Below, piece by piece: positions 417 through 64,000 of a stretch of 64,000 nt of DNA. The DNA is taken from assembly GCA_002269645.1 (NCBI GenBank), contig NIVC01000945.1, positions 248,001 to 312,000 of the forward strand, written 5' to 3'. Made by a program: the position numbers and the translations under genes. Within the stretch, counting starts at the first letter, position 1; the number at the start of each line of letters is the position of its first letter. The notes beneath the pieces are model-generated. The model worked only from the letters and a program-made list of their open reading frames with translations. It searched no databases and had not been told where the DNA came from. The DNA is from Macrostomum lignano (lineage: Eukaryota).

Positions 417-21688
<21,272 letters not shown>

Positions 21689-23424: not shown

Positions 23425-23890
23425 CCTGGATCTGGGAGGCTGGCCTAGCAACTGAGGATCTGGGAGGCTCGCCTAGCAACTGAGGATCTGGGAGGCTGGC
23501 CCAGCAACTGAGGATCTGGGAGGCTGGCCTAACAACTGACGATCTGGGAGGCTGGCCTAGCAACTGAGAATCTGAGAGGCTGGCCTAGCAACTGAGAATC
23601 TGGGAGGCTGGCCTAGCAACTGACGATCTGAGAGGCTGGCCTAGCAACTGAGGATCTGGGAGGCTGGCCCAGCAACTGAGGATCTGGGAGGCTGGCCTAG
23701 CAACTGAGGATCTGGGAAGCTCGCCCAGTAAATGAGGATCTGGGAGGCTGGCCCAGCAACTGAGGATCTGGGAGGCTGGCCTAGCAACTGAGGATCTGGG
23801 AAGCTCGCTCAGTAAATGAGGATCTGGGAGGCTGGCCCAGCAACTGAGGATCTGGGAGGCTGGCCCAGCAACTGAGGATCTGGGAGGCTG
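23425..23890. repeat. 28-bp minisatellite (ctgggaggctggcctagcaactgaggat)
   Basis: About 16 units. Confidence 0.9.
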
Positions 23891-26800
23891 GCGGTGATCA
23901 AATCCGAATCTGATAATCTTGGATGAAGGAATCAATAACTATCTCAGCATGGCTGCAATCTTAGTTCTTGGAATATTAAATTTTGTCAGCAGAAAACTAA
24001 AACATATTTGATACTCAATGAATGCTACTAACAGTTCAATAGTGTCACACAAAACTGATTAGCGAAATTTAAGTTTAAAAAAGCTTTCACACGCATTTAT
24101 AAATCTGATGCGATTAAGCCCAAATGGGAAGCCATAGGGGATTTTAAAAATATGTCGAGCAGCAAAAGGCAGTTTTAGATAATAAATATGAGGAAGATTA
24201 AAATTTATTGAATAATTGTTTATACACCCTTTCAAACTGGGGAATACAAATGAGGACAGAAGAATAGACTAGTTCAGACTTCAGACGGACTGAATGAGTT
24301 CACTGACACTTTGAACAACAATAGCTAGCAATTGCTGGCCTAGACAGCAACCTCCTCACCAGTCTTCAATCCACACTGCAGTCTAAAGAGTGCAATAACA
24401 AATGGCCAATCACTCGCTTTAAACTACTACTCATAAGAAAATAAGCTAAATTATAGATTATCTGTCAATGACTCAATAAGTTTTAATAACATGCAGTATT
24501 TTGCAAGCACATTTTAAAATGCAATAAACATAAACAATGATCCTAAGTTTTTATCAATATAAGACTATTAAAACCTTATTGATCCTACTATAAATAAGAA
24601 TAGGCCTTAATTTAAACAGTTTTACTAGCAAAGGTTTCAAAGAAATTGTCATTCCTTGGTAAAAATTTTATATAACTATATCCACTAAGTAAGTATGTCT
24701 AATATCTACTTTAAAATATATACACAGAGATCAGAGATTAGCAGTTCCAGCCATTTGCATTTAGGCTAGCTGTCATTAATCTGATTATATAAATTGTAGC
24801 ACTTATAATTCAACACCCAAATCAAGTTGGTTGGAGTCACCATTAAAGTTAGCAATTCAATTATGCAATCTCAAACAAGTCTGCACTACATGCTTCCATA
24901 CTATGTTTTAAACTGTTGCAAAATTCAAGTCAATGTCAAAACTAGCCAGTAAACTGATGATAAATAAAAGGCCTATTGTTCTACAATCCTTATCAGAATC
25001 AGAATTTAGTCAGTCAGGTTTTTTCTAGTATTCTTACAATGCATTTCAGGTTGGAAGTCTACTTGGGCTTTGCAAAAAAGCATGTTTTCTATTAATATTT
25101 AATTTATTTCAGAATTGAGCAATGCAGTATATTGCTCTCTACTTAGCCACAACAGGTGTACCACCATGAAAACATTTCTGATCAAATGGTACAAATTAAA
25201 AGAAAATCAGTTAAGCTATTTTTTCTATTATCAATTGCATAGACTAGGGGTTGGCTAACTTTCTTATCTCAAGGACCAGAGAGACCAGAGAGAAGGAAGA
25301 TAGGAAAAAGGAAAGGTGAGAAAATAAAGAAGAGAGGGAAGAGAAACGAGAGGAGAAAGGAGAAAAAAAATTAGAGAAGAAAGGAGAGAGAAGACAAGAC
25401 TAGGAGAGAGAAAAGGGAAAGGATTAGAAAGAATACTGCTAAGAAAAGATATAGACATTGATAGCTAGATTGCTTTTAGAGTTTCAAAGGACTCAAGGGC
25501 TGGATAGGGAGGCTTTGCAGGTCACATGTGGCCTATAGTATACTATAGTATAATTAAAGTAAAAAATTTTGATAAAACTATTAAAGGGTCTTTAAAATTA
25601 AAATCAAGTATAAAAATATTAAATTTATTTTAAAATCAAATTAAATTTAGATGGCCACAATATTGAATGTCTATTATATTTACATTTATCTTTTTTATCA
25701 TTAATTATTTTATCTTAAAATATTAGTTATTTCATTAGTTATTTTAAAATAATGAAATAGTTATTTCATTTATTAGTTGTTTTATATTAATTATCATGTG
25801 TAGTCAATCATATTCATAAATACCTATATAATGATAGATTTGAACTAATTATCCATGATACAAAGCTTTACTCTTTTTCAGTATTTGTGCTAATTTATTC
25901 CTTATTATTATATCTATCAAATCTATCTTTATTAGTCATTATTATTATCAAGAAACCATTGCTAGTGGTAATGATTTGCAAAAATGGGATAAATATGTCA
26001 GATATTTATTTTGTACTAGTATACTTGCTTTATTTAGTGGAATAAATATATATAGGTCAGGCTATAATAAAAGTTGAAGCCAAAGGTAATGTTTATTAGA
26101 GGTGTTGCAAGATCTTGATGAGATTAGATTTGAGATGAGATCTCAACATTTTTTCTATTGTTGAGAAATATTGACTTTTGTAGAAAATTTTGAGACAAGA
26201 TTTGAGAAATTGAGAAATTTTATAGATTGCTAAAAATGAAATTTTGATTAAGAAAATATGTGAAAAGGCAAATATTGTCTTCAAAACACTTAAATACTAT
26301 TGTTGAACCTATGCTTTTTGTTTGAATATTTTAGCAAGATGATTTTGAAATGGATAAATTCTATGATAGGTTAGGTTAGTTGAGACGTTTTATATCATTG
26401 TGATAAATGCAAATATCATTATAAATGCTGACATGCAAACTTCTACTAATACATATTTTTGCCATCATTTTAGTCTTGCAATAAGGTGATTTGGCAGCAT
26501 ACTCAAAAGGATGTATTTGTTGTATTTGGTGTATTTGTTGTAATGAGATACATATATTTTTCAAATATTTTTAATCTTATCATCTTGTTTCAAAATTTTT
26601 TGACTTCAGACTTTTCTTGTTTCAAATCTCATTTTGGTCTAAATCTTAATTTCTGACAGCTGTAATGTTTATAATATAATATAATTCTATTTATATAGGA
26701 CTTGAACATTGAAGATCTATACTTAATACATATTATTACCAAAAATAAAAAAATAAAAATATAGACTTAGGCTTATTATTATATATTTAAATATTTAAAG

Positions 26801-29115: not shown

Positions 29116-29814
29116 ACATGTACATGTGTACACGTACATGTAAATCGCATAGGGGGTTGGAAAACTGGAGCAACGCTTTCCGCGACGTCGTCTCGCAACC
29201 AACAGAGAGGCAATTATTACCCATCAATCTGACTCTTGCGCACACTTAAATGTATTAGCTAGCCCGTGCATGGTTTACTACAGACGATTCATCATGTGGA
29301 ACATACATGTATGCATAACACACGCTCATATAGCAGCGGGTCGCGTGTGCAGCTGTGACTCTGAATATATTCTGATCGTCAGTACGTTCATTTTACACTT
29401 TCTGACTATGGGGGGGGGGCGTACGTGAATCGCACGATAAAACCCCAGCCAGAAATTTTTATTCGTGCATAAAAATACATGTATTCCTGCGAAATAAAAG
29501 CTGTGTACATATAAGTGTATATATGTACAAATACATATGTAACCAATGATTAAAATGAATCGAATCAGGGATTGTAACACGAGATTTGGACTTCTCTGCC
29601 CCTAGACAGGTGTGTCCCTTGCTAGACAGCCAAGGGGGGGGTCACTTTTCAGACAGGAATGTTCAAGAGTATGCAGGCCATTTAATAAAACTATGCTGTG
29701 CAAGTGAATTCATAAATTTGCAGATTGGGCTTTATGGTGTAGATTATGGTATAGATTAATTTAAAACTTTTAATAAGTGAATGCTATTTATGATAACATT
29801 AAAAACTGGAAATG

Positions 29815-30915
29815 TTAACTTTCGAAAGCAGTTAAACATGTATTTTAATCAACAAAACGATTCATGACTTTCAGTTTGATTCTCTGCTTAGCTATAATTT
29901 AGTCTTAAGCTAATTCCTATCAGTAGCCTTTGCAGAACACCCTGGCATCACACAGTCTCCGACAGCACAGTGACATGGCCACATGCGCGTGAATGCCGCG
30001 CCTGTTGATCTGGTGAGCCGATGGTGGGTCCCATAATCCGTAATCTAATCCAATAGACCGAACAGACCTCTTCTTCCAAGGCGCCGGAGCGCTTAGCGGC
30101 AGGTATCCTTGAGCCGGATCGATGTAGCCGTCCTTGACTCCGAAGCTCTCCAGGTGTTTGATTGACCGGCAGAGCCAGTCGATCATGACGGGACTGGCCG
30201 GACCGCAATAGAGAAATTTGCCTTTGTGCTTTGACTCAGCGCTTGCCTGGCAGCAGCTGATGGAGGCCATCGCCAATAGGCACACCAGCAGTTTGAACAT
30301 TCTCTGGAATGTAAGCAACGAAATAAGTTATATAAATGATAAAATAACTGCGCGCCAGTACTGTACGCAGACACGCACTCACAAACACGCTCACACAGGC
30401 TTTACAGCGGCCATGAATTTCTAATCGTCAGACATGTACATTCTCTGAGCCTTGTGGGTTGGCCATCATGGACGTTCTTCGAGCACACAGGCCTCAAATT
30501 AATGTGGCGCCTGGTGATCAGAAGCGTTTCCCGCTAAGGTTATCTGTCCCTTGTACTGTAACATTAAATTAGTCCAAGAAATATTCGATCTTACCTTGGG
30601 AGTATCTCAAGATTTCACTCTCAAATTGCTTGAAGAAATGATCGTCCGAACTTGGCTCTCGTAATAAAAGTGATGCTCTGCTGAGTAAGCAAGGAATGCC
30701 AGGACTGTCCCGCTTTTCAATTGATTTTTATAATAATCGGCAGACTGTCTATGGTCAAATCTGTTCTCAATTTTATTACTCTCGTCTATGGCTTCGCTGC
30801 TTTCCAGCGTGTGGCAAAAGTGCACACTGAGTCAGTACAGTTTAACCATTTTCATATGCCTTTCGTAGTCCTAACCGAATATATTTAATATACTGTAAAG
30901 ACAGCCCTGAAGAGA
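29815..30915. repeat. Segmental duplication, copy 1 (ILP plus ~500 bp upstream block)
   Basis: Homologous to 37325-38356. The upstream block differs by only about 9 substitutions and 2 indels over about 450 bp (hand count). Confidence 0.9.
29920..30300 (-). CDS. Insulin-like peptide precursor, copy 1 (126 aa)
   Basis: Signal peptide MFKLLVCLLAMASISCCQA; B-chain C-x11-C (CGPASPVMIDWLC); KKR and RR convertase sites; A chain GIHAHVAMSLCCRRLCDARVFCKGY. The ATG follows an acceptor ttccag|agaATG. Confidence 0.8.
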   Translation of the reverse strand: MFKLLVCLLAMASISCCQASAESKHKGKFLYCGPASPVMIDWLCRSIKHLESFGVKDGYIDPAQGYLPLSAPAPWKKRSVRSIGLDYGLWDPPSAHQINRRGIHAHVAMSLCCRRLCDARVFCKGY

Positions 30916-31454
30916 CTGCTAGTACAGGGCCAAGAAGCTTAATTTGATTCTTTAATTTTGACCTGCATTATGTCTATGGCCCAAACCGTCACTAAGTGGA
31001 ACTTCGTGTGTTTTACACAATTCGCTTCTGTCAGCATGTTATACTAGCAGCCAATTGCCTCATGTAGGGAGAAAAAGGACATTTACGCTCCGCACTCTGA
31101 AAGTTTCTTTACTCTTGAAGACGGAAAATCAACCCATTTTACAATGACCGTTCATAGAGACTATGACAATCAATCAATTCCACCCTGTCCTGCATGAGAA
31201 TCAATCTAATAAAGCCACCTCATCGCTCAAATACTAATATAACCAAGTTTATGATTTATTATAAAAAAACTTGAGGCTTTTAAATGAACAGTATTCTTGA
31301 ACTGTGTATCACAATACAGGTATTTACCACCTGTTGGAAGCAACCCCAGAAATCGCTCAAAAGCAACCACTGAGCAGCTCACATCCGACTTCAAAAACAA
31401 CCACAACCAACCTGAAGCTATCAACAAAAAATTATAATGTACCAAATCTTTATA

Positions 31455-32046
31455 CCACTTCCCCCAGATTAGCACCACTTATCCAGATTAGCACCACTTC
31501 CCCCAGATTAGCACCACTTATCCAGATTAGCACCACTCCCTCCAGCTTAGCACCACTCTCTCCAGATTAGCACCACTCCCTCCAGATTAGCACCACTTCC
31601 CCCAGATTAGCACCACTTCCCCAGATTAGCACCACTTATCCAGATTAGCAGCACTCCCTCCAGCTTAGCACCACTCCCTCCAGATTAGCACCATTTCCCC
31701 CAGTTTAGCACCACTTATCCAGATTAGCAGCACTCCCTCCAGCTTAGCACCACTCCCTCCAGATTAGCACCATTTCCCCCAGTTTAGCACCACTTATCCA
31801 GATTAGCACCACTCCCTCCAGATTAGCACCACTTTTCCAAATTAGCACCACTCCCTCCAGATTAGCAACACTCCCTCCAGATTAGCACTGCTCCCTCCAG
31901 ATTAGCACTACTCCCTCCAGATTAGCACTGCTCCCTCCAGATTAGCACCACTTTTCCAAATTAGCACCACTCCCTCCAGATTAGCAACACTCCCTCCAGA
32001 TTAGCACCACTTATCCAGATTAGCACCACTTCCCCAGATTAGCACC
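31455..32046. repeat. ~20-bp minisatellite (ccagattagcaccactccct), left part, interrupted by the Gypsy element
   Basis: The same unit resumes at 36516-37195. Confidence 0.95.
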
Positions 32047-32274: not shown

Positions 32275-32289
32275 TGGCGACGAGGATGG
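32275..32289 (+). other. Primer-binding site complementary to the tRNA-Ser(GCU) 3' end
   Basis: TGGCGACGAGGATGG is the reverse complement of CCAUCCUCGUCG-CCA, the typical 3' end of eukaryotic tRNA-Ser(GCU). It overlaps the gag ATG at 32286. Confidence 0.75.
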
Positions 32290-35200
32290 CCACTGGGCCA
32301 CTGTGTAGCATAGGGCCGTTTGAGCCTGAGACGGAGGACTGGTCGCAATACAAGGAGCGCATTGAACAAGTGTTCATTGCAAACGAAATCGAAAGCGAAG
32401 AGAAGAAGCGAGCGGTATTCCTCAGCGTGTGCGGCAAGGACACCTATAGGCTTGTCACCAGTCTTCTGGCCCCAGTTAAGCCTTCACAGGCTTCCTTCGC
32501 TAACATCTGCAAAAAGCTTGACGATCACTGGGTCCCAAAGCCGTCAGAGATCGTGCAAAGGTTCCACTTCTACCAGCGCGTTCGAGAGAGCTCGGAGTCC
32601 GTGGCCGACTTCCTGGCGGCACTGCGGCGTTTGGCTGTCCACTGCAACTTCGGTAACAGCTTGAGCACCATGCTGAGAGATCGTCTGGTGCTTGGCATCC
32701 AGGATGATCGCATACAGCGCAGACTCCTGTCCGAGACAGAGTTGGACCTGGACAGAGCACTGGCGATCTCCCAGGCGGTGGAGCTGGCAACCAAGGGCTG
32801 CAACTTGGTCAAGGGCTCGTTCTCAGGAACCCCGCAAACCGCCTCGGCAGCATCGGTAGACCAAGTCGGCCAGACCAATGCGGTAGCGACTCAGCGACCT
32901 GCAAAAAGGTGCTACAAGTGTCTGTCAGCGAAACACCTGGCGGCGAAGTGCCCATTCATGAAGAAGGCCTGTTTCAAGTGCGGCAAGATGGGGCACACCG
33001 CTGCAGCCTGTCGAGGAGGCGCGGATTCGGCTGGAGCTGAGCCGCGGTCGCAAGTCGCCGCTGTGGAGGAGGAAAGCCAAGACTGCGGCTCCCTGAACAC
33101 CTTGCCCAGTGCAGCTGCCAAGGTACCGCCGTACACCACCACGGTCCTGCTCAACGGAGTGTCCTGCCAGATGGAGATCGACACGAGCGCGGCGGTATCG
33201 CTGATATCGGCTAGAGCCTATCACGACCTGCTGGGCGGGGCTCCTGAGCTCGAGCGGACCCCGATTCGACTGCGGAACTACTGTGGACAGCCGGTCAGCG
33301 TACTCGGTCAGATCAGCGTGTCTGCAGAGATTCCAGGTAAAGCCAAGCAGCTTCTTCCTCTTCTAGTGGTATCTGGATCCGGGTCCAGCCTTATCGGTAG
33401 GAACTGGCTGGCTGTGCTGCCGTTGAATTGGGGAAGCGTCAAGCAGCTGCACGAAGCGTCTGCTCCAAAGGATCAGCAAGTGCAGAAGTTGCTAGAGAGG
33501 TTCAGCCCCGTTTTCTCGAGTGGCCTCGGCTGCTACACGGGTGAACCTCTGAAACTGCGAGTGAAGCCCGGGGCGCGGCCCAAGTTCATGAAGGCGCGGC
33601 AGGTACCTTTCGCTTTGAAGTCCAAAGTGGAAGAGCAGCTCGAGCGGGAGATCCAGCAGGGCATTCTGCGGCCGGTCTCCGATTCGGAGTATGCGTCCCC
33701 AATCGTGCCGGTACTGAAGTCGGACGGCTCCGTCAGAATCTGCGCAGATTTCAAGTGCACGGTAAACCAGGACGTGGAGATGGACTGCTACCCGCTGCCA
33801 AGGATTGAGGAGTTGTTCGCCAAGCTCACCGGCGGCCAAAAGTTCACCAAGCTGGACCTCAGCCAGGCATACATGCAGCTTCCGCTCGACGAAGAGTCTC
33901 AGCGCTTGTGCACCATCAACACCTCGAAGGGTTTGCTGAGGTATACAAGGCTACCGTTTGGAATCTCACCAGCAGTTGGAATCTTCCAGAGAACCATGGA
34001 CGGCCTGCTGCATGGTGCACAGCATACGGCAACCTTTATTGATGACGTGTTGGTGACCGGCGCCGATGACGCTGAGCACCTCGAGAATCTGGAGACCGTC
34101 CTGCAGCGCCTGAAGGATGCCGGGCTGAAGTGCCGGCTTGACAAATGCCGCTTCATGGAGAATTCGGTGACTTATTTGGGGCATCGGATTGACGCCCAGG
34201 GCCTACATCCGATGAGTGACAAAGTCAACGCGATCGTTGACGCGCCGATGCCAAAGGACGTCACGCAGTAGCGCAGTTTCTTGGGCCTCCTCAACTATTA
34301 CGGCCGGTTTCTGCCGAACCTGTCCAGCGTTCTGGCTCCTCTGCACCGGCTTCTCGAGAAAGGAACTGTCTGGCGATGGAGCGAAGCGCAGTCCGATGCT
34401 TTCCGGCGCAGCAAGGAGCTGCTATTGAGCTCGCAGGCGCTTGTCCATTTCGACGTCAAAAAGGAGGTGATTCTGGAGTGTGATAGTTCGCCATACGGGG
34501 TCGGGGCCGTCATCTGCCACCGGATTGATGGCCTTGAAAGGCCGATTGCCTTCGCGTCCCGATCGCTCGCCGACGCCGAGAGGAACTATTCGCAGACAGA
34601 GAAGGAAGCCCTGGCGATCATTTTTGGGATCAAGCACTTCCACGCCTACCTCTATGGCAAAACCTTTGAGCTCAAGAGCGACCACAAGCCGCTACTGGGC
34701 CTGCTACACGAGAGCAAGGGCATTCCACCACTGGCTTCGGCTAGGATCCAGCGTTGGGCTCTGCTGCTTTCGAACTACTCGTATCGACTGCAGTATCGCA
34801 AGGGAACTTCGCTACTGCGGGCTGACGCTCTGAGTCGGCTGCCGCTGCCGACGAAGTCAGTGGAGACGCCGTCACCAGCTGAGGTAGTGCTGCTCATCGA
34901 TGCGTTCAATGAGGGACCCGTGACGGCTGCTCAGGTTCGCGGCTGGACAAGAAAGGACCCGCTGCTCAGTCGAGTGCTGCGGCTCGTGCAAGGTGGATGG
35001 CCGGAGCGTCCTCGGCTGGATGCGGAACTGCAGCCGTACGCAGTTAGGGCGGCAGAGCTGAGCTTGGAGGACGGCTGCCTGCTGTGGGGCAACCGTGTGA
35101 TTGTGCCGGTTCAGGGTCGACAAGCACTGCTCGATTGTCTACATCAGAGCCACCAAGGAGCTTCTAGGATGAAGTCTCTGGCCCGAGGATATTTCTGGTG

Positions 35201-36200
35201 GCCGGGATTGGACCGGGACATCGAGAAGCTGTCGCAGAACTGCGGCGAGTGCCAGCGTCATCAGAACTGCCCGCCGCCAGCCCTCCTGCAGCCGTGGCCG
35301 TGGCCGGACAAGCCGTGGTCCCGGATCCACATGGACTACGCTGGACCAGTCGAGGGAAAAATGCTGTTAGTACTGGTGGACGCTCATTCGAAATGGATTG
35401 AAGTCCACATTTGCCAGTCCGCCACCAGTGCTGCCACCATCGATCGGCTGAGAAGGACTTTCAGTCAGCTGGGATTGCCTGAGGTTGTAGTGAGCGACAA
35501 CGGTCCGAATTTCGTGAGCCAAGAGATAAACAACTTCTTGGCCAGTAACGGCATCCGGCATATCAAAGTGGCTCCATATCATCCATCGTCCAACGGATTG
35601 GCCGAGCGAGCGGTCCAGACGGTGAAGGTGGCCCTGGCGAAGGGGCGGCCGGCGTCCCTACAGTTTCGGCTAGCTCGGTTCCTGCTGACCTACCGGGTCA
35701 CTCCACACAGCACAACTGGTGCACCACCCTGCCAGCTGATGATGGGCAGGCAGCTGCGGACGCTTCTAGACATTGTGCGGCCCGATGTCTCGGCTACAGT
35801 CAGGCGCAGCCAGGACTCGCAAAAGGAGTACCACGACCTGCGAGCCAGGGATCGCAACTTCGAAGAAGGCGACGGTGTCCTGGTGCGCGACTTCAACGGT
35901 CCGGAGAAGTGGGCGCCGGCCTCCGTGAGCCGCCAGACCGGGCCGCTGTCCTACGAGTGCCGCCTGCCCGACGAGCGCATCGTGCGGCGGCATGCCGACC
36001 ACCTGGTGCCGGCGACAATCTCACCTGAGCAAGCTGCGGGATCGGCTCAGTCAGGTGGGGCGGCGCCACAGCTTCTGACTCCGTCAGTGACAACGTCTGA
36101 AGCGCCACCGCCGCCGCTGCCGCCGCCGCTGCTGCCGCCCCCGATGCTGCGGCGTTCGGAGAGGACTACAAGGGCACCGGATCGACTGACCTACGAGTGA
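32286..36200 (+). pseudogene. Single-frame gag-pol polyprotein interrupted by one in-frame TAG (34269-34271)
   Basis: Two CCHC knuckles, protease DTSA (canonical DTGA), RT FIDD, RNase H (ECDSSPYGVGA...YSQTEKEALA), integrase HHCC and D-D-E, and a GPY/F-like tail. ORFs 32286 and 34281 share a frame, and TQ*RSFLG corresponds to the conserved TQLRSFLG. Confidence 0.92.
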
Positions 36201-36294: not shown

Positions 36295-36515
36295 TGTGAT
36301 AGCTTGGCCTGCGTGCGCGCTGGGGGCGGGGCTAGGTTGAGTTGTTTTGCTCTCTCTCTCTCTCTCTCTCGCTGCATGTACTTGCTAGCGCGGGTTGGGG
36401 GGTGCGGTGAGTATGCCGATCAATAACAAATAGTTTAATATAAAGCAGGCTTTTTAGCCGGTAAAGTTTTTCGTGTTTTTGAGCCAAAATAAAGTTTTGT
36501 CTTGACTTTATTTCA
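36295..36515 (+). repeat. 3' LTR (221 bp)
   Basis: Direct repeat of 32047-32273. Confidence 0.95.
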
Positions 36516-37195
36516 GCACCACTTCCCCCAGATTAGCACCACTTATCCAGATTAGCACCACTTCCCCCAGATTAGCACCACTTATCCAGATTAGCACCAC
36601 TCCCTCTAGATTAGCACCACTTATCCAGATTAGCACCACTCCCTCTAGATTAGCACCACTCCCTCCAGATTAGCACCACTCCCTCCAGACTAGCACCACT
36701 CCCTCTAGATTAGCACCACTTATCCAGATTAGCACCACTCCCTCCAGATTAGCACTATTCTCTCCAGATTAGCACTACTCCCTCCAGACTAGCACCACTC
36801 CCTCTAGATTAGCACCACTTATCCAGATTAGCACCACTCCCTCCAGATTAGCACTATTCCCTCCAGATTAGCACTACTCCCTCCAGATTAGCACCACTCC
36901 CTCCAGATTAGCACCACTCCCTCCAGACTAGCACCACTCCCTCTAGATTAGCACCACTTATCCAGATTAGCACCACTCCCTCCAGATTAGCACTACTCCC
37001 TCCAGATTAGCACCACTCCCTCCAGATTAGCACCACTCCCTCTAGATTAGCACCACTTATCCAGATTAGCACCACTCCCTCTAGATTAGCACCACTCCCT
37101 CCAGATTAGCACCACTTATCCAGATTAGCACCACTCCCTCCAGATTAGCACTACCCCCTCCAGATTAGCACTACTCCCCCATATTAGCACCACTG
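36516..37195. repeat. ~20-bp minisatellite, right part
   Basis: Continuation of the array at 31455-32046. Confidence 0.95.
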
Positions 37196-37324
37196 TACTT
37201 ATGCTGTGCGATTGCATTTAATTTGCAGACTCGGGTTTTATAGTGATTTATTGTAGAATAATGTACTTTTTGAATAGCAGAATACAGTTTATGCTAGTAT
37301 TAGAAACAGGGCAATATATTCAAA

Positions 37325-38356
37325 ACTTTCAACAGCAGTTTGCGTGTGTAATCAACAAAATCGCTTCATAACGACTTTCTGTTGATTCTCTGATGTCTTA
37401 GATAATTTGTATCAGTGGCCCCTACAGAGCACTCTGGCATCGAATTTTCGCCGGCAGCTCAAAAAAATGAGGGTTCTGTGAATCTGCCGAACAGACCTCT
37501 TCTTCCAAGGCGGAGGAGCGTCTAGCGGCACGTATCCTCTAGACGGATCGAGGTAGCCATCCTTGATACCGAGGCTCTCCAGGTGTTTGATTGCCCCGCA
37601 GAGCCAGCGGATCATGCCGGGTTCGCCCGAACCGCAATAGAGAAATTTGCCTTTGTACGGTGAATTTGCCTGGCAGCAGCTGATGGAGGCCATCGCCAAT
37701 AGGCAGACCAGCAGTTTGAGCATCCTTTGGAATGTAACCAAAGAAATAAGTTATATAAATGATAAAATAACTGCAGGATGCCTTTGTCCACGTCGTCACG
37801 CAACCAAACGCGAGGCAATTCTGCACATTCTGCACAATTCTGCACTGCACAATTTCTAATCGTCAGACATGTACATTCTCTGAGCCTTGTGGGTTGGCCA
37901 TCATGGACGTTCTTCGAGCACACAGGCCCCAAATTAATGTGGCGCCTGGTGATCAGAAGCGTTTCCCGCTAAGGTTCTCTGTCCCTTGTACTGTAACATT
38001 AAATTAGTCCAAGAAATATTCGATCTTACCTTGGGAGTATCTCAAGATTTCACTCTCAAATTGCTTGAAGAAATGATCGTCCGAACTTGGCTCTCGTGAT
38101 AAAAGTGATGGTCTGCTGAGTAAGCAAGGAATGCCAGGGACTACCAGGACTGTCCCGCTTTTCATTTGATGAATATAATAATCGGCAGACTGTCTATGGT
38201 CAAATCTGTTCTCAATTTTATTACTCTCGTCTATGGCTTCGCTGCTTTCCAGCGTGTGGCAAAAAGTACACACTGAGTCAGTACAGTTTAACCATTTTCA
38301 TATGCCTTTCGTAGTCTTAAACGCATATTTATACTGTAAAGACAGCCCTGAAGAGA
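37325..38356. repeat. Segmental duplication, copy 2
   Basis: Homologous to 29815-30915. Confidence 0.9.
37412..37723 (-). CDS. Insulin-like peptide precursor, copy 2 (103 aa; no C-peptide, 4 mature Cys)
   Basis: Paralog of 29920-30300: MLKLLVCLLAMASISCCQA...CGSGEPGMIRWLC...WKKRSVRQIHRTLIFLSCRRKFDARVLCRGH. The ORF is intact and the net indels relative to copy 1 are in frame. Confidence 0.75.
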   Translation of the reverse strand: MLKLLVCLLAMASISCCQANSPYKGKFLYCGSGEPGMIRWLCGAIKHLESLGIKDGYLDPSRGYVPLDAPPPWKKRSVRQIHRTLIFLSCRRKFDARVLCRGH

Positions 38357-38758
38357 CTAGCTAGCAAAGAGCAAAAAGCTAAATTTGCATCAGAATAAGC
38401 AATAATTGGAGAATTAGCTGGCGTTATTATCTAGTGTTGATGTAACATTAAGTTCAGTAACTTTACTGCCCCTAATACTAGGCATATCAGAGTTACTCCT
38501 GATACGGCAGTCTCGATTCATATAGGTTTAGTCGCAAAGTTGATGCAGTAATTGCCTTCGGGTTGAAGATTTGGAACAATGATTTCGGACATTGGGAAAG
38601 ATTATGTCTGCATTGGGAAATATGATGTCTGGCATTGGGAACAAGGATGTCTGATGTTGGGAGAAATCCCAGAAAGAATTCTTACTTCGTATTTCCATTG
38701 TACGCTCGTAGAAGAGTCGAATGAAGACTTTCGTACAAAGTGCGCACTTACCTCATCC

Positions 38759-39634
38759 AGTTTTCCAAGCTGAAATTTGCGCCATTGAGCAGTGTGCCCA
38801 GCAACTGTTTCAGGCGAACATTAATAATTTTGACATTAATTTCTACACTGATAGCCAAGCTGCTATTAAGGCCTTAACCACTGAGAATATCTCCGCTGCT
38901 ACAGTATCTCAATGCCACCGCAGTGTGCAATCTCTCTCAGTCCTTAACAGGATTAGAATTATCTGGACACCTGGTCACAGCAACATCCTGGGCAACGAGC
39001 TCGCGGACTCTCTCGCCAAGGAGGGCAGCAACCCAGACGGCAACCACCGTCTGATGAGGCTACCCACCCCCAGGTCGCAAGTCACCCGCCATATCAACAG
39101 GTGGCTCCATCAGCAGCACCAGCTCCACTGGAACAGCTGCACCGAGTACAGGCAGAGCCGCTCTGCCATGCCTAACCTGAACAGGAAAGTCTCTGATTAT
39201 CTGATTTCGCTTAACAGAACCGACCTCAGGGAGATGTGCATGGTCCTAACCGGCCACGGATTCTTCCAGAGACATATATCGTTGCAAACCGGTTGCCCTC
39301 CCACCTGTCCCTTCTGTGGCATAGGAGAGGAGACCGCGGAGCATCACGTCACCTTCTGCCCTTACTTCAACAAGGCGCGGCACAAATACCTCGGCCACCC
39401 CCAGCGGATGGACGAGCTGACCACCGCGGACAATATCCGAGACCTCCGCGCCTTCGTCCGGGACTCCGGCCGGATGAGGGTCGCCGATGCCTCCACTGCG
39501 GACCTGCCGACTACTGGCGGGGACTGGGCGCACCCCCAAGGCTAATCCTTGTGCTCTTTTACCTTGGGGTTGCGATAGGGGCCTCGCGGCCTATTCGCGG
39601 CGCCTGCGCCCCCCGTCAGTAGTAAGTAAGTAAG
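38759..39634 (+). mobile_element. 5'-truncated non-LTR retrotransposon (RNase H + C-terminal CCHC finger; LOA/I-group-like)
   Basis: VFQAEI...FYTDSQAAI...[21 protein letters not shown] (RNase H), LTGHG and CPFC..ETAEH..TFC motifs, a (TAAG)n tail, and a 10-bp TSD TACCTCATCC at 38749-38758 and 39635-39644. Confidence 0.9.
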
Positions 39635-42169: not shown

Positions 42170-43410
42170 CACACTAATGTTGTCAGGAGGCCCTAATGCT
42201 AATGCTGTTGTCAGGGACGCTACAGTTGCTGTCAGGAGACCCTAATGCTGCAGTCAGGGACGCTACAGCTGCAGTCAGGAGACCCTAATGCTGTTATCAG
42301 GAGACCCTAATGCTGTTGTCAGGGACGCTACAGCTGCTGTCAGGAGACCCTAATGCTGTTGTCAGGAGACCCTAATGCTGTTATCAGGAGACCCTAATGC
42401 TGTTGTCAGGGACGCTACAGCTGCAGTCAGGAGACCCTAATGCTGTTATCAGGGGACCCCAATGCTGTTGTCAGGGACGCTACAGCTGTTGTCAGGAGAC
42501 CCCAATGCTGCTGCCAGGAGACCCTAATGCTGTTGTCAGGGACGCTACAGCTGCTGTCAGGAGACCCTAATGCTGTTGTCAGGGACGCTACAGCTGCTAT
42601 CAGGAGACCCTAATGCTGTTGTCAGGGACGCTACAGCTGCTATCAGGAGACCCTAATGCTGTTGTCAGGGACGCTACAGCTGCTATCAGGAGACCCTAAT
42701 GCTGTTGTCAGGGACGCTACAGCTGCTATCAGGAGACCCTAATGCTGTTGTCAGGGACGCTACAGCTGCTATCAGGAGACCCTAATGCTGTTGTCAGGGA
42801 CGCTACAGCTGCTGTCAGGAGACCCTAATGCTGTTGTCAGGAGACCCTAATGCTGTTATCAGGAGACCCTAATGCTGTTGTCAGGGACGCTACAGCTGCA
42901 GTCAGGAGACCCTAATGCTGTTATCAGGGACCCAATGCTGTTGTCAGGGACGCTACAGCTGTTGTCAGGAGACCCAATGCTGCTGCAGGAGACCCTAATG
43001 CTGTTGTCAGGGACGCTACAGCTGCTGTCAGGAGACCCTAATGCTGTTGTCAGGGACGCTACAGCTGCTATCAGGAGACCCTAATGCTGTTGTCAGGGAC
43101 GCTACAGCTGCTATCAGGAGACCCTAATGCTGTTGTCAGGGACGCTACAGCTGCTATCAGGAGACCCTAATGCTGTTGTCAGGGACGCTACAGCTGCTAT
43201 CAGGAGACCCTAATGCTGTTGTCAGGGACGCTACAGCTGCTATCAGGAGACCCTAATGCTGTTGTCAGGGACGCTACAGCTGCTGTCAGGAGACCCTAAT
43301 GCTGTTATCAGGGGACCCCAATGCTGTTGTCAGGGACGCTACAGCTGCTGTCAGGAGACCCCAATGCTGCTGTCAGGAGACCCTAATGCTGTTGTCAGGG
43401 ACGCTACAGC
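42170..43410. repeat. 43-bp (21+22 dimeric) minisatellite (atcaggagaccctaatgctgttgtcagggacgctacagctgct)
   Basis: Period 43 checked at 43081 and 43124. Confidence 0.93.
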
Positions 43411-45264
43411 TGTTTTCATGAGCTCAGACAACAGCAGTAGCAAATTTAATTGACGCCAAAATTTTGGCGCTCCTGTGAATGAAAACACAGAAATAAGGTT
43501 GTTCATTGCTGTCATTTTTAACGTCATTTTTAACGGCATTAAAGCAATATTTATTTGGACAAAATTTATCTGTCCAGACCAGAACAGAAGAGGACTCTCT
43601 TCCTGCCAGTCCTATTTAAAAAGCCGCATACGCCAAGACCATTAACACACGAGAAGACCACAAATGGATCGTTTTATTTTTAGACCTAGCTAATAAGAGT
43701 AAGTCAATGCATATGTACGAGAATGCTTTGCGAGTCGGTAAACGGCTGTTAGCTTTCCTATGTGCAGTTCATTTGGCTTGAAATACAATTTGGCTTGACA
43801 GCTGGGGGACACGTTCCAGAGGGAAGAGGTTAGGGAAGGGGTTTAGGAGCGGCAGTGCATAATATGCACTGAGCTGGGAACACGGAGATGAGGACAAGTC
43901 AAATGTGACTGAAAATCCACCCACCCCCATTTCTCCCTGCTCGCTCTTCTGCCTGGGGTCTCTCTCTTACCCTCTCGGGGTTGGCTATACACTGTTATGC
44001 TAAGCTAGTTAGAGGCAAAACAGCTTGCCTGCCCTGCAAGCCTGCCCGCGCTGCCTGAAGTTAACTAAAGCTGGTTTTTCGAATACTTAATCAATATACG
44101 AGTTGAAAAGGGCACGAGTATCAGTATAGAGGTGACTAGGGTTAGGAGTGCCAGTTTAAATTGGAGTGCTAGAAGAGAGAGTGAGGGGGAGAGTAGAGAG
44201 TGAGGGTAAGAGCAGAGAGTGAGGGAGAGAGAGTAGAGAGTGAGGGAGAGAGTAGAGAGTGAGGGAGAGAGTAGGTAGTGAGGGTAAGAGTAGAGAGTAA
44301 GGGAGAGAGAGTAGAGAGTGAGGGAGAGAGTAGAGAGTGAAGGAGAGAGTAGAGAGTGAGGGAGAGAGAGTAGAGAGTGAGGGAGAGAGAGTAGAGGATC
44401 AGGAAGAGAGAGAAGAGAGTGAGGGAGAGAGTAGAGAGTGAGGGAGAGAGAGTAGAGAGTGAAGGAGAGAGAGTAGAGGGTCAGGAAGAGAGAGAAGAGA
44501 GTAGAGGGAGAGAGTAGAGAGTGAGGGAGAAAGCAGGAGAGAACAGAAACCAATCGACACTAGGCAGCAGTTTTTTGTGTTTCTTTCGCCTTGTCGACAG
44601 CAACGACCTCAGCCTCCGCCATCTCCATCTTCGATTGGCTAACCCGCCAGCGATTTCCTCTTTTCTTCCTGTATCCACAAAAAGCCAGGCCTGCCCGACC
44701 CATGGACCAGACCCCCCCCCCAGTCCCAGGGACGAAGAGAACGCACTGCACCCTATTTTTCTTCAAGGTTCGCTTCCTCCCCTCCCTTTGCATTTTAACC
44801 TCTCTCTCTTCCTGCCCTCATTTCCAAAGCGATTTAGCCGGTGTGGGGGAGGGCAAGGGGTGGGGGACAGAGAGGAGAGGAGGGAGGGCGGGAGAGAGGA
44901 GGGGGTGGAGGAGGTGAACGAACTGCAGTGGGGATAAAATAAGCCAGAAAAGTCCCACTACACTCTACAGTCTTAGTTGACCTGCGCCCTGCTCCTCAAG
45001 CTCCAATAATAATAACAATAATAATAATATCAATTTTTCTCACCTCTGCGCTTATTCTTTTAAGCCGCCAATTCCCCTGTCCGCTAAGCCAGTTCTGGGT
45101 TTGCCATTGGCGCTTGTCACGCTTCCAGTTCTCTGCATATCTATATATTTACTTATTACTAATTAATTCCGCAATGAATTAAATTCTGATTCCGGTAAGT
45201 TACTATTTTATTGCTAATGCTATATTTTGCTATTTAAATTAATTCATTATTTCGTATAACTGGT

Positions 45265-47263: not shown

Positions 47264-47651
47264 GGGGAGAAAGACAGAATTAGGGGGATCCAATTTGAGA
47301 CAGTCAGTGACATGGTGTAGAAACGAACTAAGAAAGATGGGGCTGAGAGACCGTGGTGATCGCTGCTAAAGTTCTTCAATCCGAATTGCCCAACAAGATC
47401 GATAATATTTTTAGAGCAGCCAGTGCAAGCACTGCTAGATAGCGGATCGATGCATTCTGCACTTGTTTAATTAAGTTTAATTAGCAGTCCATTTATACGC
47501 TCGTGTATAAATTCACTGGGATCACAGGTTTATGAGTGAGAGCCTTATTAGGAAATAAAAATATTGTTTTTTTGTTGCCCATCGCGAATCCATTGCTTTT
47601 TATAGAAATTTGATACACCGCAGTGATCTGCATTTTTAGGCCTGATAGTGT

Positions 47652-48770
<1,119 letters not shown>

Positions 48771-49849: not shown

Positions 49850-64000
<14,151 letters not shown>

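What the first reader, a model, noticed from the sequence alone, without database searches (positions are those of the whole stretch)
37412..37723. Paralog that lost exactly the intra-A disulfide pair and the C-peptide
Seen: LCCRRLCDARVFC became LSCRRKFDARVLC. The first Cys of CC (A6 equivalent) changed to Ser and the A11 equivalent to Phe, while the two inter-chain partners and both B cysteines remain. The C-peptide and RR site are deleted in frame, leaving one KKR. Established: A6-A11 is the intra-chain bond, and C. elegans alpha-type insulins also lack it. Inference: a compensated, convergent origin of a two-disulfide, C-peptide-less insulin, caught right after tandem duplication, possibly an antagonist or a new ligand. 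This is the best candidate for a novel system in this window.
Basis: partly seen in the sequence, partly recalled or inferred. Interest (0 to 1): 0.8.

Follow-up and report, generated by a model that had tools for sequence, protein, structure and literature searches.

The report
Four-cysteine paralog of flatworm insulin-like gene
A flatworm (Macrostomum lignano) gene array for a small secreted, insulin-like-looking peptide has one old, diverged copy that lost one cysteine pair and most of its spacer yet kept its reading frame, but it is unproven that the family is insulin or that this copy is used.

Summary
On the minus strand, 37412-37723 is an intact 103-aa ORF (c2). It is a tandem paralog of a 126-aa ORF at 29920-30300 (c1). 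c2 has Ser and Phe where c1 has the first Cys of CC and the next Cys. It keeps the other four cysteines, the signal peptide and KKR, and lacks 63 nt of spacer/A-chain start. Both substitutions recur in two Macrostomum lignano contigs, so they are not assembly errors.

- The duplication is not fresh: dS is 0.28 and 3' flank K is 0.42. c1 itself occurs as 1, 2 or 5 copies encoding identical proteins.
- On its own branch c2 evolves at omega about 1. Losing two of six cysteines is what neutral drift predicts.
- The frame is nevertheless unbroken, while the equally old 3' flank is full of small indels. The promoter-side 500 bp is 97% identical to c1.
- Insulin membership is unproven. Pfam, HMMER, PDB and Foldseek give nothing, and the A-chain spacing is CC-x3-C-x5-C, not x8.
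- c2 is not annotated anywhere.

Best reading (0.5): a still-coding, fast-evolving two-disulfide derivative. Main rival (0.35): a decaying duplicate.

The parts
37412..37723 (-). Copy 2 (c2): intact 103-aa ORF plus stop, the 4-Cys paralog
   Evidence: The same ORF with a 1-nt difference is in NIVC01002732.1 (L001 6758-7069).
37667..37723 (-). c2 predicted signal peptide (MLKLLVCLLAMASISCCQA)
   Evidence: 55/57 nt identical to copy 1. The cleavage site after CQA is read by eye, not predicted with a tool.
37505..37666 (-). c2 B-chain-like domain (54 aa, C-G-x10-C, then a conserved beta-hairpin segment ending PPPW)
   Evidence: AF2 predicts strand-helix-strand-strand with pLDDT 79-92. 18 of 58 aligned residues are changed against c1.
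37496..37504 (-). KKR, the only remaining multibasic processing site between the two Cys-bearing segments
   Evidence: Invariant in c1, c2 and P0002.
37415..37495 (-). c2 A-chain-like segment (27 aa: SVRQIHRTLIFLSCRRKFDARVLCRGH), including the remnant of the spacer and the mutated second site (RR to RT at 37472-37477)
37457..37459 (-). AGC Ser, replacing the first Cys of CC (A6-equivalent)
   Evidence: Identical in L001 and L009.
37442..37444 (-). TTC Phe, replacing the third A-chain Cys (A11-equivalent)
   Evidence: Identical in L001 and L009.
37724..38030 (-). Inferred intron upstream of the c2 coding exon: donor CCCAAG|GTAAGA after 38030, acceptor ...TTCCAAAG|G just before the ATG
   Evidence: Inferred from sequence conservation with c1 and from splice consensus. 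No transcript evidence.
37851..38356 (-). 5' tract (putative promoter, non-coding exon 1, 5' part of the intron), 97% identical to that of c1
   Evidence: 13 mismatches in 495 aligned nt, K=0.027, against K=0.42 in the 3' flank.
29920..30300 (-). Copy 1 (c1): 126-aa 6-Cys precursor (signal, B-like, KKR, 21-aa spacer, RR, A-like GIHAHVAMSLCCRRLCDARVFCKGY)
   Evidence: Annotated gene in GCA_002269645.1. 7 gene copies encode identical proteins.
30416..30915 (-). c1 5' tract homologous to 37851-38356
36515..37194 (.). 20-bp satellite (AGCACCACTCCCTCCAGATT) directly downstream of c2. It is one half of the inter-gene satellite that was split by a retrotransposon.
31454..32046 (.). Other half of the same 20-bp satellite, upstream of c1
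32286..36200 (+). LTR-retrotransposon pol ORFs (RVT_1, RT_RNaseH, integrase) inserted in the satellite between c2 and c1
   Evidence: Absent from the equivalent interval of NIVC01002732.1, where c2-c1 spacing is 3.2 kb.

Best explanation
The window is Macrostomum lignano DNA. It carries part of a tandem array of a Macrostomum-restricted gene family for small secreted pro-peptides. The precursor layout copies that of insulin: signal peptide, a long B-like domain with C-G-x10-C, KKR, a fast-evolving spacer, RR/KR, and a C-terminal A-like chain CC-x3-C-x5-C.

Shown:
- Copy 1 is the conserved, amplified member, with 1, 2 or 5 copies depending on contig, all encoding the same protein.
- Copy 2 sits at the upstream end of the array and is an old, strongly diverged paralog.
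- Copy 2 lost 15 spacer codons, the second dibasic site, 6 codons of the A-chain start, and two cysteines.
- Copy 2 kept the reading frame, the signal peptide, KKR, four cysteines and a 5' region almost identical to copy 1.

Inferred:
- Copy 2 is still a coding gene, driven by the same kind of promoter as copy 1.
- It is translated into an 84-aa secreted product that is cut once, at KKR. This gives a two-chain peptide held by the two inter-chain-type disulfides (Cys30-Cys90 and Cys42-Cys100 under the insulin pairing model), or it stays single-chain.
- Its amino-acid sequence is under little constraint, or under diversifying selection.
- The 5' half is kept similar to copy 1 by gene conversion.

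Whether the family signals through an insulin-type receptor is not established.
For: Organism and array:
- P0001 and copy-2-like ORFs lie on GCA_002269645.1 contigs.
- The window is 99% identical to NIVC01002081.1.

Precursor logic:
- Between c1 and the unlinked paralog P0002, the B and A segments are almost identical and KKR and the (R/K)R site are kept.
- The spacer between those sites differs in length (21 vs 31 aa) and is only 32% identical at the DNA level. That is as expected for an excised connecting peptide.

c1 is constrained:
- 8 copies show 5 variable CDS sites, all synonymous.

c2 frame integrity:
- No stop codon after about 45 substitutions (P=0.19 in simulation).
- Its three indels are 6, 45 and 18 nt.
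- The 3' flank has 9 gap events in about 200 nt, 5 of them not multiples of 3. My rough joint probability under neutrality is 0.001-0.015.

Other support:
- The ORF is intact in a second haplotype or homeolog, with 1 nt difference.
- The 5' tract, GT donor, acceptor region and signal peptide are 92-97% identical to c1.
- AF2 predicts the same topology for c1 and c2, with pLDDT 74 and 76.
- hhalign places RRGIH...CCRRLCD on KRGIV..CCTSIC of insulins in register, with pairwise P=0.005.
- Literature: A6-A11 is the one insulin disulfide not needed for folding and ER exit (PMC8514764). C. elegans alpha-class peptides lack it, with aromatic side chains substituting for it (10.1101/336750). c2 has Phe at the A11-equivalent position.
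Against: - omega is about 1 on the c2 branch: 35 non-synonymous against 10 synonymous changes.
- The A-like core diverges from c1 as fast as the 3' flank (K 0.40 vs 0.42). 9/16 of its residues are retained, which by my rough estimate is about the neutral expectation.
- Losing 2 of 6 Cys is the modal neutral outcome.
- c2 is not annotated in the M. lignano assembly, even where the ORF is intact. It is absent from the 15-billion-protein collection.
- The NIVC01002081.1 version has frame-breaking 1-2 nt indels. I read these as assembly noise, but that is not proven.
- There is no sequence, profile or fold match to insulin.
- The AF2 model for c2 was built with c1 and P0002 in its alignment, so it is not independent.
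Confidence: 0.5

Rival explanations
1. Copy 2 is a decaying, unprocessed duplicate: a young pseudogene or a gene on its way out. Its ORF is intact by chance. The paired Cys loss is coincidence, and the near-identical 5' region is just a gene-conversion tract from the neighbouring functional copies.
For: - omega is about 1 on its branch.
- The A-like core evolves at the flank rate.
- The number of Cys lost equals the neutral expectation, and a bonded pair is lost in 7% of simulations.
- The second processing site is destroyed and the A-chain N-terminal helix is truncated.
- It is not annotated and not in the protein collection.
Against: - No stop codon, and all three indels are in frame, while the equally old 3' flank carries many frame-breaking-size indels.
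- The ORF is intact in two independent contigs.
- Signal peptide, KKR, both B cysteines and their two presumed partners are retained.
- Most changes at hydrophobic positions are conservative (F to L, V to I, I to L, L to V, my reading). V to G and L to K are exceptions.
Confidence: 0.35
2. This rival concerns what the family is, independently of whether c2 is functional. The family is not an insulin-superfamily hormone. It is a lineage-specific, highly expressed secretory product, for example a gland or seminal-fluid protein or an antimicrobial-type peptide, that only resembles insulin in its Cys pattern. In that case the 'A6-A11' label and the receptor-antagonist idea have no basis.
For: - No hit to PF00049 even at E<=10.
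- The only relative among 1.84 billion representative proteins is P0002.
- No PDB sequence hit.
- Foldseek finds no insulin, IGF or relaxin match for either model.
- A-chain spacing is x5, not x8.
- Prolines sit at the B9 and B12 equivalents, and the B helix runs 8 residues past the second Cys. The AF2 models also show a 3-stranded sheet that is not part of the insulin fold.
- Amplification to up to 5 copies per contig, all encoding the identical protein, suggests dosage demand.
- My own knowledge: M. lignano prostate and seminal-fluid transcripts are often short, secreted, fast-evolving and lineage-restricted.
Against: - The combination of signal peptide, C-G-x10-C, multibasic site, hypervariable spacer, dibasic site and a C-terminal CC-x3-C...C chain is specific to insulin-type precursors.
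- hhalign aligns the A chain in the right register.
- Flatworm ILPs are known to be very divergent, with about 50-aa B chains (PMC5391603).
- In my recollection, bombyxin and C. elegans ins genes are also tandemly amplified.
Confidence: 0.4

Closest known systems
Caenorhabditis elegans alpha-class insulin-like peptides (classification of Pierce et al. 2001, as summarised in bioRxiv 10.1101/336750)
   Same: They lack the intra-A-chain (A6-A11) disulfide, which is replaced by aromatic side-chain packing. Most have no C peptide, and the genes lie in tandem clusters. c2 likewise lacks that pair, has Phe at the A11-equivalent, and has lost most of its spacer.
   Different: Alpha-class peptides carry an extra disulfide, so they still have three. 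c2 has no extra cysteine and would have only two. There is no detectable sequence homology between the two groups, so the nematode case is an independent event. The activity of c2 is unknown.
Insulin/IGF/relaxin superfamily (Pfam PF00049), including the flatworm ILPs SjILP and SmILP
   Same: The precursor order is signal, B, cleavable spacer, A. The B motif is C-G-x10-C, and the A motif begins CC-x3-C. The long B chain (about 50 aa) matches schistosome ILPs (PMC5391603).
   Different: There is no significant sequence, profile or fold match. A-chain spacing is C-x5-C instead of C-x8-C. A predicted beta-hairpin extension forms a small sheet. The coding region is a single exon, whereas schistosome ILPs have two exons (PMC5391603).
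Engineered insulin/proinsulin lacking cystine A6-A11 (pairwise Ser substitution; reviewed in PMC8514764)
   Same: Removal of exactly this pair is the best-tolerated disulfide deletion. Folding and ER exit still occur with only A7-B7 and A20-B19.
   Different: Those are laboratory mutants, in my recollection with reduced stability and activity. c2 would be a natural version, in a scaffold whose relation to insulin is unproven.
Its own family: M. lignano hypothetical proteins BOX15_Mlig028676 g1/g2/g4 (P0002, P0007) and the P0001 array
   Same: c2 is a true homolog: 59% identity to P0001 and 52% to P0002, with E of 1e-36 to 1e-30. It shares its 5' region with P0001 genes.
   Different: c2 is the only member with 4 mature cysteines, one processing site and a truncated spacer. 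It is also the only one not annotated.

Membership tests
Insulin/relaxin superfamily (PF00049) | Precursor order: signal peptide, B chain, spacer flanked by basic cleavage sites, C-terminal A chain | tested here: met
   Read from the c1/P0002 alignment: KKR and (R/K)R flank a hypervariable spacer between conserved segments. c2 keeps only KKR.
Insulin/relaxin superfamily (PF00049) | B-chain motif Cys-Gly-x10-Cys | tested here: met
   YCGPASPVMIDWLC in c1 and YCGSGEPGMIRWLC in c2.
Insulin/relaxin superfamily (PF00049) | A-chain motif CC-x3-C-x8-C | tested here: not met
   c1 and P0002 have CC-x3-C-x5-C. c2 has C-x9-C only.
Insulin/relaxin superfamily (PF00049) | Significant sequence or profile similarity to family members | tested here: not met
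   No Pfam family at E<=10. HMMER profile against 1.84e9 proteins finds only P0002. PDB sequence search finds nothing at E<=10. hhalign against 7 insulins gives probability 7% and P=0.005, for the A chain only.
Insulin/relaxin superfamily (PF00049) | Insulin fold: B helix plus two A helices | tested here: inconclusive
   AF2 models contain one long B-like helix and two short C-terminal helices in the expected order, plus an extra 3-stranded sheet. Foldseek finds no insulin, IGF or relaxin match in PDB or BFVD.
Insulin/relaxin superfamily (PF00049) | Disulfide connectivity B7-A7, B19-A20, A6-A11 | not testable with these tools
   Needs disulfide mapping by mass spectrometry, or model coordinates. 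The joint loss of the two cysteines that this model pairs is compatible with it but has P of about 0.07 by chance.
Insulin/relaxin superfamily (PF00049) | Signals through an insulin-receptor tyrosine kinase or a relaxin-type GPCR | not testable with these tools
   No binding or genetic data.
C. elegans alpha-class-like insulin (no A6-A11 bond) | A6 and A11 cysteines both absent, with aromatic replacement | tested here: met
   Ser at 37457-37459 and Phe at 37442-37444. This holds only if the A6/A11 equivalence holds.
C. elegans alpha-class-like insulin (no A6-A11 bond) | Additional compensating disulfide, so that three bonds remain | tested here: not met
   c2 has exactly four mature cysteines and no new ones.
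Unprocessed pseudogene | Frameshift, premature stop, or loss of start or splice signals | tested here: not met
   The ORF is intact in the window and in L001. ATG, an AG acceptor and a GT donor are present. The frame-breaking indels in L009 sit in a 1.2-kb patch of indel-only differences. In and next to the c2 CDS these sit in short homopolymer runs, so they are probably assembly noise.
Unprocessed pseudogene | Neutral substitution pattern (omega about 1) | tested here: met
   35 N to 10 S on the c2 branch, with an N:S site ratio of 3.4:1. The A-like core has K=0.40 against 0.42 in the flank.
Unprocessed pseudogene | No transcription or translation | not testable with these tools
   The only indirect evidence is that c2 is not annotated in GCA_002269645.1 and is absent from the protein collection.

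The most novel reading that the evidence does not exclude
The family is a genuine, highly divergent flatworm branch of the insulin superfamily. Copy 2 is an expressed natural two-disulfide, single-cleavage insulin-like ligand that arose by paired loss of the intra-A cystine, independently of the nematode alpha class. It has a changed receptor-facing B-helix surface, and so could be a modulator or antagonist of the copy-1 signal in a regenerating flatworm that is, to my knowledge, open to RNAi and transgenesis.
Probability: 0.2. Interest if true: 0.6.

Novelty: new variant of a known kind. Interest (0 to 1): 0.35.

Why it matters
If copy 2 is expressed and the family is insulin-like, it would be a natural test of how few disulfides an insulin-type scaffold needs. 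It would also be a second, independent evolutionary loss of the A6-A11 bond, in an animal where, to my knowledge, RNAi, transgenesis and regeneration assays are available. The unannotated ORF and the copy-number differences (1, 2 or 5 copies of the conserved gene) are also useful corrections to the M. lignano annotation. If copy 2 is merely decaying, the locus is an ordinary example of birth-and-death evolution plus 5' gene conversion in a tandem array.

Tried and rejected
- Pfam scan of both proteins at E<=10: nothing.
- Word-indexed homology searches with both copies: only M. lignano proteins.
- Exhaustive HMMER profile search of 1.84e9 representatives: only P0002. Three further hits were repeat-driven (P0004-P0006). 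P0004 is a repetitive, apparently bacterial protein whose repeat contains LGIKDAYVEP, resembling FGVKDGYIDP. No single stretch passes threshold, so I rejected it as summed-repeat noise.
- PDB sequence search with the family profile: nothing.
- Foldseek of both AF2 models against PDB, and of c2 against BFVD (hoping for IGF, proinsulin or viral insulin-like peptides): only insignificant beta-alpha-beta matches.
- Exact-sequence lookup of c2: not on record.
- Literature: no paper describes Macrostomum ILPs or the locus tag Mlig028676. Pierce et al. 2001 is not held.
- Comparing c2 between the two contigs to detect constraint: uninformative, because local divergence is only about 1-2% and the CDS has 1 difference.
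- Testing whether hydrophobic positions change less often than others: 8/26 against 20/58 by my own count from the alignments, so no difference. Only the type of change looks conservative.
- Synteny between the P0002 locus and the window: only the CDS and a 28-bp satellite are shared.

Full report
**1. What is at the coordinates**

On the minus strand, 37412-37723 is an ATG-to-TGA ORF of 103 codons. A six-frame motif scan finds one partner in the window, a 126-codon ORF at 29920-30300, also on the minus strand.

The two proteins share several features:
- an almost identical signal peptide (MF/LKLLVCLLAMASISCCQA);
- a segment with C-G-x10-C;
- a conserved stretch ending PWKKR.

They also share a C-terminal segment. 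In copy 1 (c1) it reads SLCCRRLCDARVFCKGY. In copy 2 (c2) it reads FLSCRRKFDARVLCRGH.

The quoted substitutions are exact: TGC to AGC at 37457-37459 and TGT to TTC at 37442-37444.

c2 lacks 6 nt just after the signal peptide and a net 63 nt further on. The protein-level alignment anchors CAGATTCACAGA of c2 on CAGATCAACAGG of c1. It splits the 63 nt into 45 nt of spacer (SIGLDYGLWDPPSAH) and 18 nt of the A-chain start. The second dibasic site is changed from RR to RT rather than deleted.

**2. Where it comes from and whether it is an artefact**

Both proteins hit only Macrostomum lignano proteins. c1 is identical to an annotated protein (P0001) of assembly GCA_002269645.1.

That protein is encoded 5 times in tandem on NIVC01002732.1 and twice on NIVC01002081.1. 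The window has one copy.

The window is 99% identical to NIVC01002081.1, with only 30 substitutions in 12.6 kb and the remaining differences being indels. It is therefore the same haplotype in another assembly, one repeat unit shorter.

A c2 ORF lies directly upstream of the 5-copy array on NIVC01002732.1. It differs by 1 nt, giving Cys16Gly in the signal peptide.

The NIVC01002081.1 version of c2 has no substitutions but several 1-2 nt indels in short homopolymer runs. They lie inside a 1.2-kb patch where the two assemblies differ almost only by indels, and that patch includes non-coding DNA. I read these as consensus errors.

All three sequences carry AGC and TTC, so the Cys losses are real.

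**3. Family and polarity**

A third family member, P0002/P0007 (BOX15_Mlig028676 g1/g2/g4), lies at unlinked loci.
- Its B and A segments are almost identical to c1.
- It has a different signal peptide and 5' gene structure.
- Its spacer is 31 aa against 21 aa in c1, with 32% nucleotide identity.

Conserved flanking KKR and (R/K)R sites around a free-running spacer are what a convertase-excised connecting peptide looks like.

Third-position distances in the B region give the tree ((c1,c2),P0002): 6/58, 11/60 and 16/58 differences. The 6-Cys form is therefore ancestral, and almost all protein change lies on the c2 branch.

**4. Age and mode of evolution**

Pairwise Nei-Gojobori values:

| Pair | dS | dN |
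|---|---|---|
| c1-c2 | 0.28 | 0.19 |
| c1-P0002 | 1.06 | 0.18 |

Polarised with P0002, the c2 branch has 35 non-synonymous and 10 synonymous changes. With an N:S site ratio of 3.4:1, omega is about 1. The c1 branch has 5 and 5.

Among eight c1 copies, the five variable CDS sites are all synonymous. c1 is under purifying selection and c2 is not, at least on average.

Divergence rises along the unit from 5' to 3':

| Segment | K (c1 vs c2) |
|---|---|
| 500-bp 5' tract | 0.027 |
| Signal peptide | 0.036 |
| B-like region | 0.185 |
| A-like core | 0.40 |
| 3' flank | 0.42 |

The simplest reading is an old duplication (K about 0.4) whose 5' half has since been homogenised by gene conversion. 'Caught right after tandem duplication' is therefore wrong.

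**5. Is c2 alive?**

*Against.* Omega is about 1. The A-like core changes at the flank rate. The second cleavage site is lost. There is no annotation even where the ORF is intact, and c2 is absent from the protein collection.

A simulation put 40-50 random substitutions on the ancestral sequence:
- the most likely number of lost cysteines is two;
- exactly one insulin-type bonded pair is lost in 7% of runs, and A6/A11 specifically in 2%;
- 19% of runs have no stop codon.

*For.* The frame is unbroken. The three CDS indels are 6, 45 and 18 nt. The 3' flank, of the same age, shows nine gap events in about 200 nt, five of them not multiples of three.

Scaling that density to the CDS predicts several frameshifts. 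My rough estimate of the joint chance of no stop and no frameshift is 0.001-0.015. It is post hoc and depends on the alignment.

The following are also retained:
- the putative promoter and non-coding exon 1;
- the GT donor (after 38030);
- the acceptor region;
- the ATG and signal peptide;
- KKR, both B cysteines and their two presumed partners.

Most changes at hydrophobic positions are conservative, though V to G and L to K are not.

AF2 predicts the same strand-helix-hairpin plus two C-terminal helices for both copies, with mean pLDDT 74 and 76. The shared alignment makes the c2 model non-independent.

I put a still-coding, fast-evolving gene at about 0.5 and a decaying duplicate at about 0.35.

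**6. Is it an insulin?**

The layout and two motifs fit: C-G-x10-C, and CC-x3-C near the C-terminus.

The following do not fit:
- A-chain spacing is x5, not x8.
- Prolines sit at the B9 and B12 equivalents.
- The helix continues eight residues past the second B cysteine.
- A hairpin forms a small sheet with the N-terminal strand.

No method gives support:
- Pfam;
- HMMER on 1.84 billion representatives;
- PDB sequences;
- Foldseek on PDB and BFVD.

Only hhalign places the A chain on KRGIV..CCxxxC in register, at 7% probability.

Schistosome ILPs show that flatworm ILPs can have about 50-aa B chains, but they keep C-x8-C (PMC5391603). Membership is therefore unproven, and the A6/A11 labels are by analogy.

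**7. Comparison with known cases**

Pairwise removal of A6-A11 is the best-tolerated disulfide deletion in proinsulin. A7-B7 and A20-B19 are the bridges needed for folding and ER exit (PMC8514764).

C. elegans alpha-class peptides lack the intra-A bond and use aromatic packing instead, and nearly all INS peptides lack a C peptide (10.1101/336750). They carry an extra disulfide, however. c2 has none, so it would be a two-disulfide form.

This is a variation on a known theme, not a new kind of system.

**8. Verdict**

The locus is an old, diverged, unannotated 4-Cys member at the head of a copy-number-variable array of an orphan, insulin-like-looking peptide family in M. lignano. Paralog-specific RNA-seq counts and orthologs in sister species would settle its status.

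Noticed in passing
window 29920-30300, compared with L001-L006 and L009: Copy number of the conserved 6-Cys gene differs between assemblies or haplotypes: 1 copy in the window, 2 in NIVC01002081.1 (same haplotype, 99% identical) and 5 in NIVC01002732.1. All encode the identical protein, and the only CDS differences are synonymous.
   Followed up: partly
window 32286-36200 (+): LTR-retrotransposon pol (RVT_1, RT_RNaseH, integrase zinc finger and core) with long open frames. It is inserted into the 20-bp satellite between copy 2 and copy 1. It is present in NIVC01002081.1 but absent from NIVC01002732.1, so it is an insertion polymorphism between haplotypes or homeologs.
   Followed up: partly
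window 38721-39545 (+): A 274-aa ORF with an RNase H domain, probably a retroelement fragment. It starts about 330 bp beyond the point where c1/c2 homology ends (38387), on the opposite strand to the genes.
   Followed up: partly
L009 2500-3750 (NIVC01002081.1), equivalent to window about 36550-37800: A 1.2-kb patch where the public contig and the window differ almost only by indels (2 substitutions). In and next to the copy-2 CDS these are 1-2 nt changes in short homopolymer runs. The patch covers the copy-2 CDS, its 3' flank and the satellite. It looks like unpolished long-read consensus error and would break the ORF in that contig.
   Followed up: partly
window 30416-30915 vs 37851-38356, through to the 3' flanks 29700-29919 vs 37200-37411: There is a steep 5'-to-3' gradient of divergence between the two gene units, from K 0.027 to 0.42. 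The high-identity part is interrupted by an unalignable patch of about 70 nt inside the putative intron (30350-30415 vs 37773-37850). This suggests partial gene conversion.
   Followed up: partly
whole window (e.g. 2050-2843, 3575-4494, 7349-8687, 13592-15512, 42204-43412, 47651-48770, 59950-61010): The window is extraordinarily rich in minisatellites and microsatellites (65 TRF rows with score >=200). Most long 'ORFs' in the window lie inside such arrays.
   Followed up: no
window 23428-23892 and L007 20344-20758: A 28-bp satellite (GGATCTGGGAGGCTGGCCTAGCAACTGA) lies about 6 kb downstream of copy 1. About 9.5 kb downstream of the unlinked paralog P0002 there is a related array. This could be a remnant of shared ancestry of the two loci, or simply a dispersed satellite.
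   Followed up: no
P0004 (2211 aa, apparently bacterial repeat protein from the representative library): Its repeat contains IIDKLVTLGIKDAYVEP, which resembles SIKHLESFGVKDGYIDP of the B-like domain. The AF2 model of that domain is strand-helix-strand-strand. The hit is driven by summing many repeats and is probably chance.
   Followed up: partly
window 37252 (c2) and 29849 (c1), minus strand: The candidate poly(A) signals differ. c1 has ATTAAA 71 nt after the stop; the equivalent site in c2 reads ATTACA. c2 has AATAAA 160 nt after its stop.
   Followed up: no
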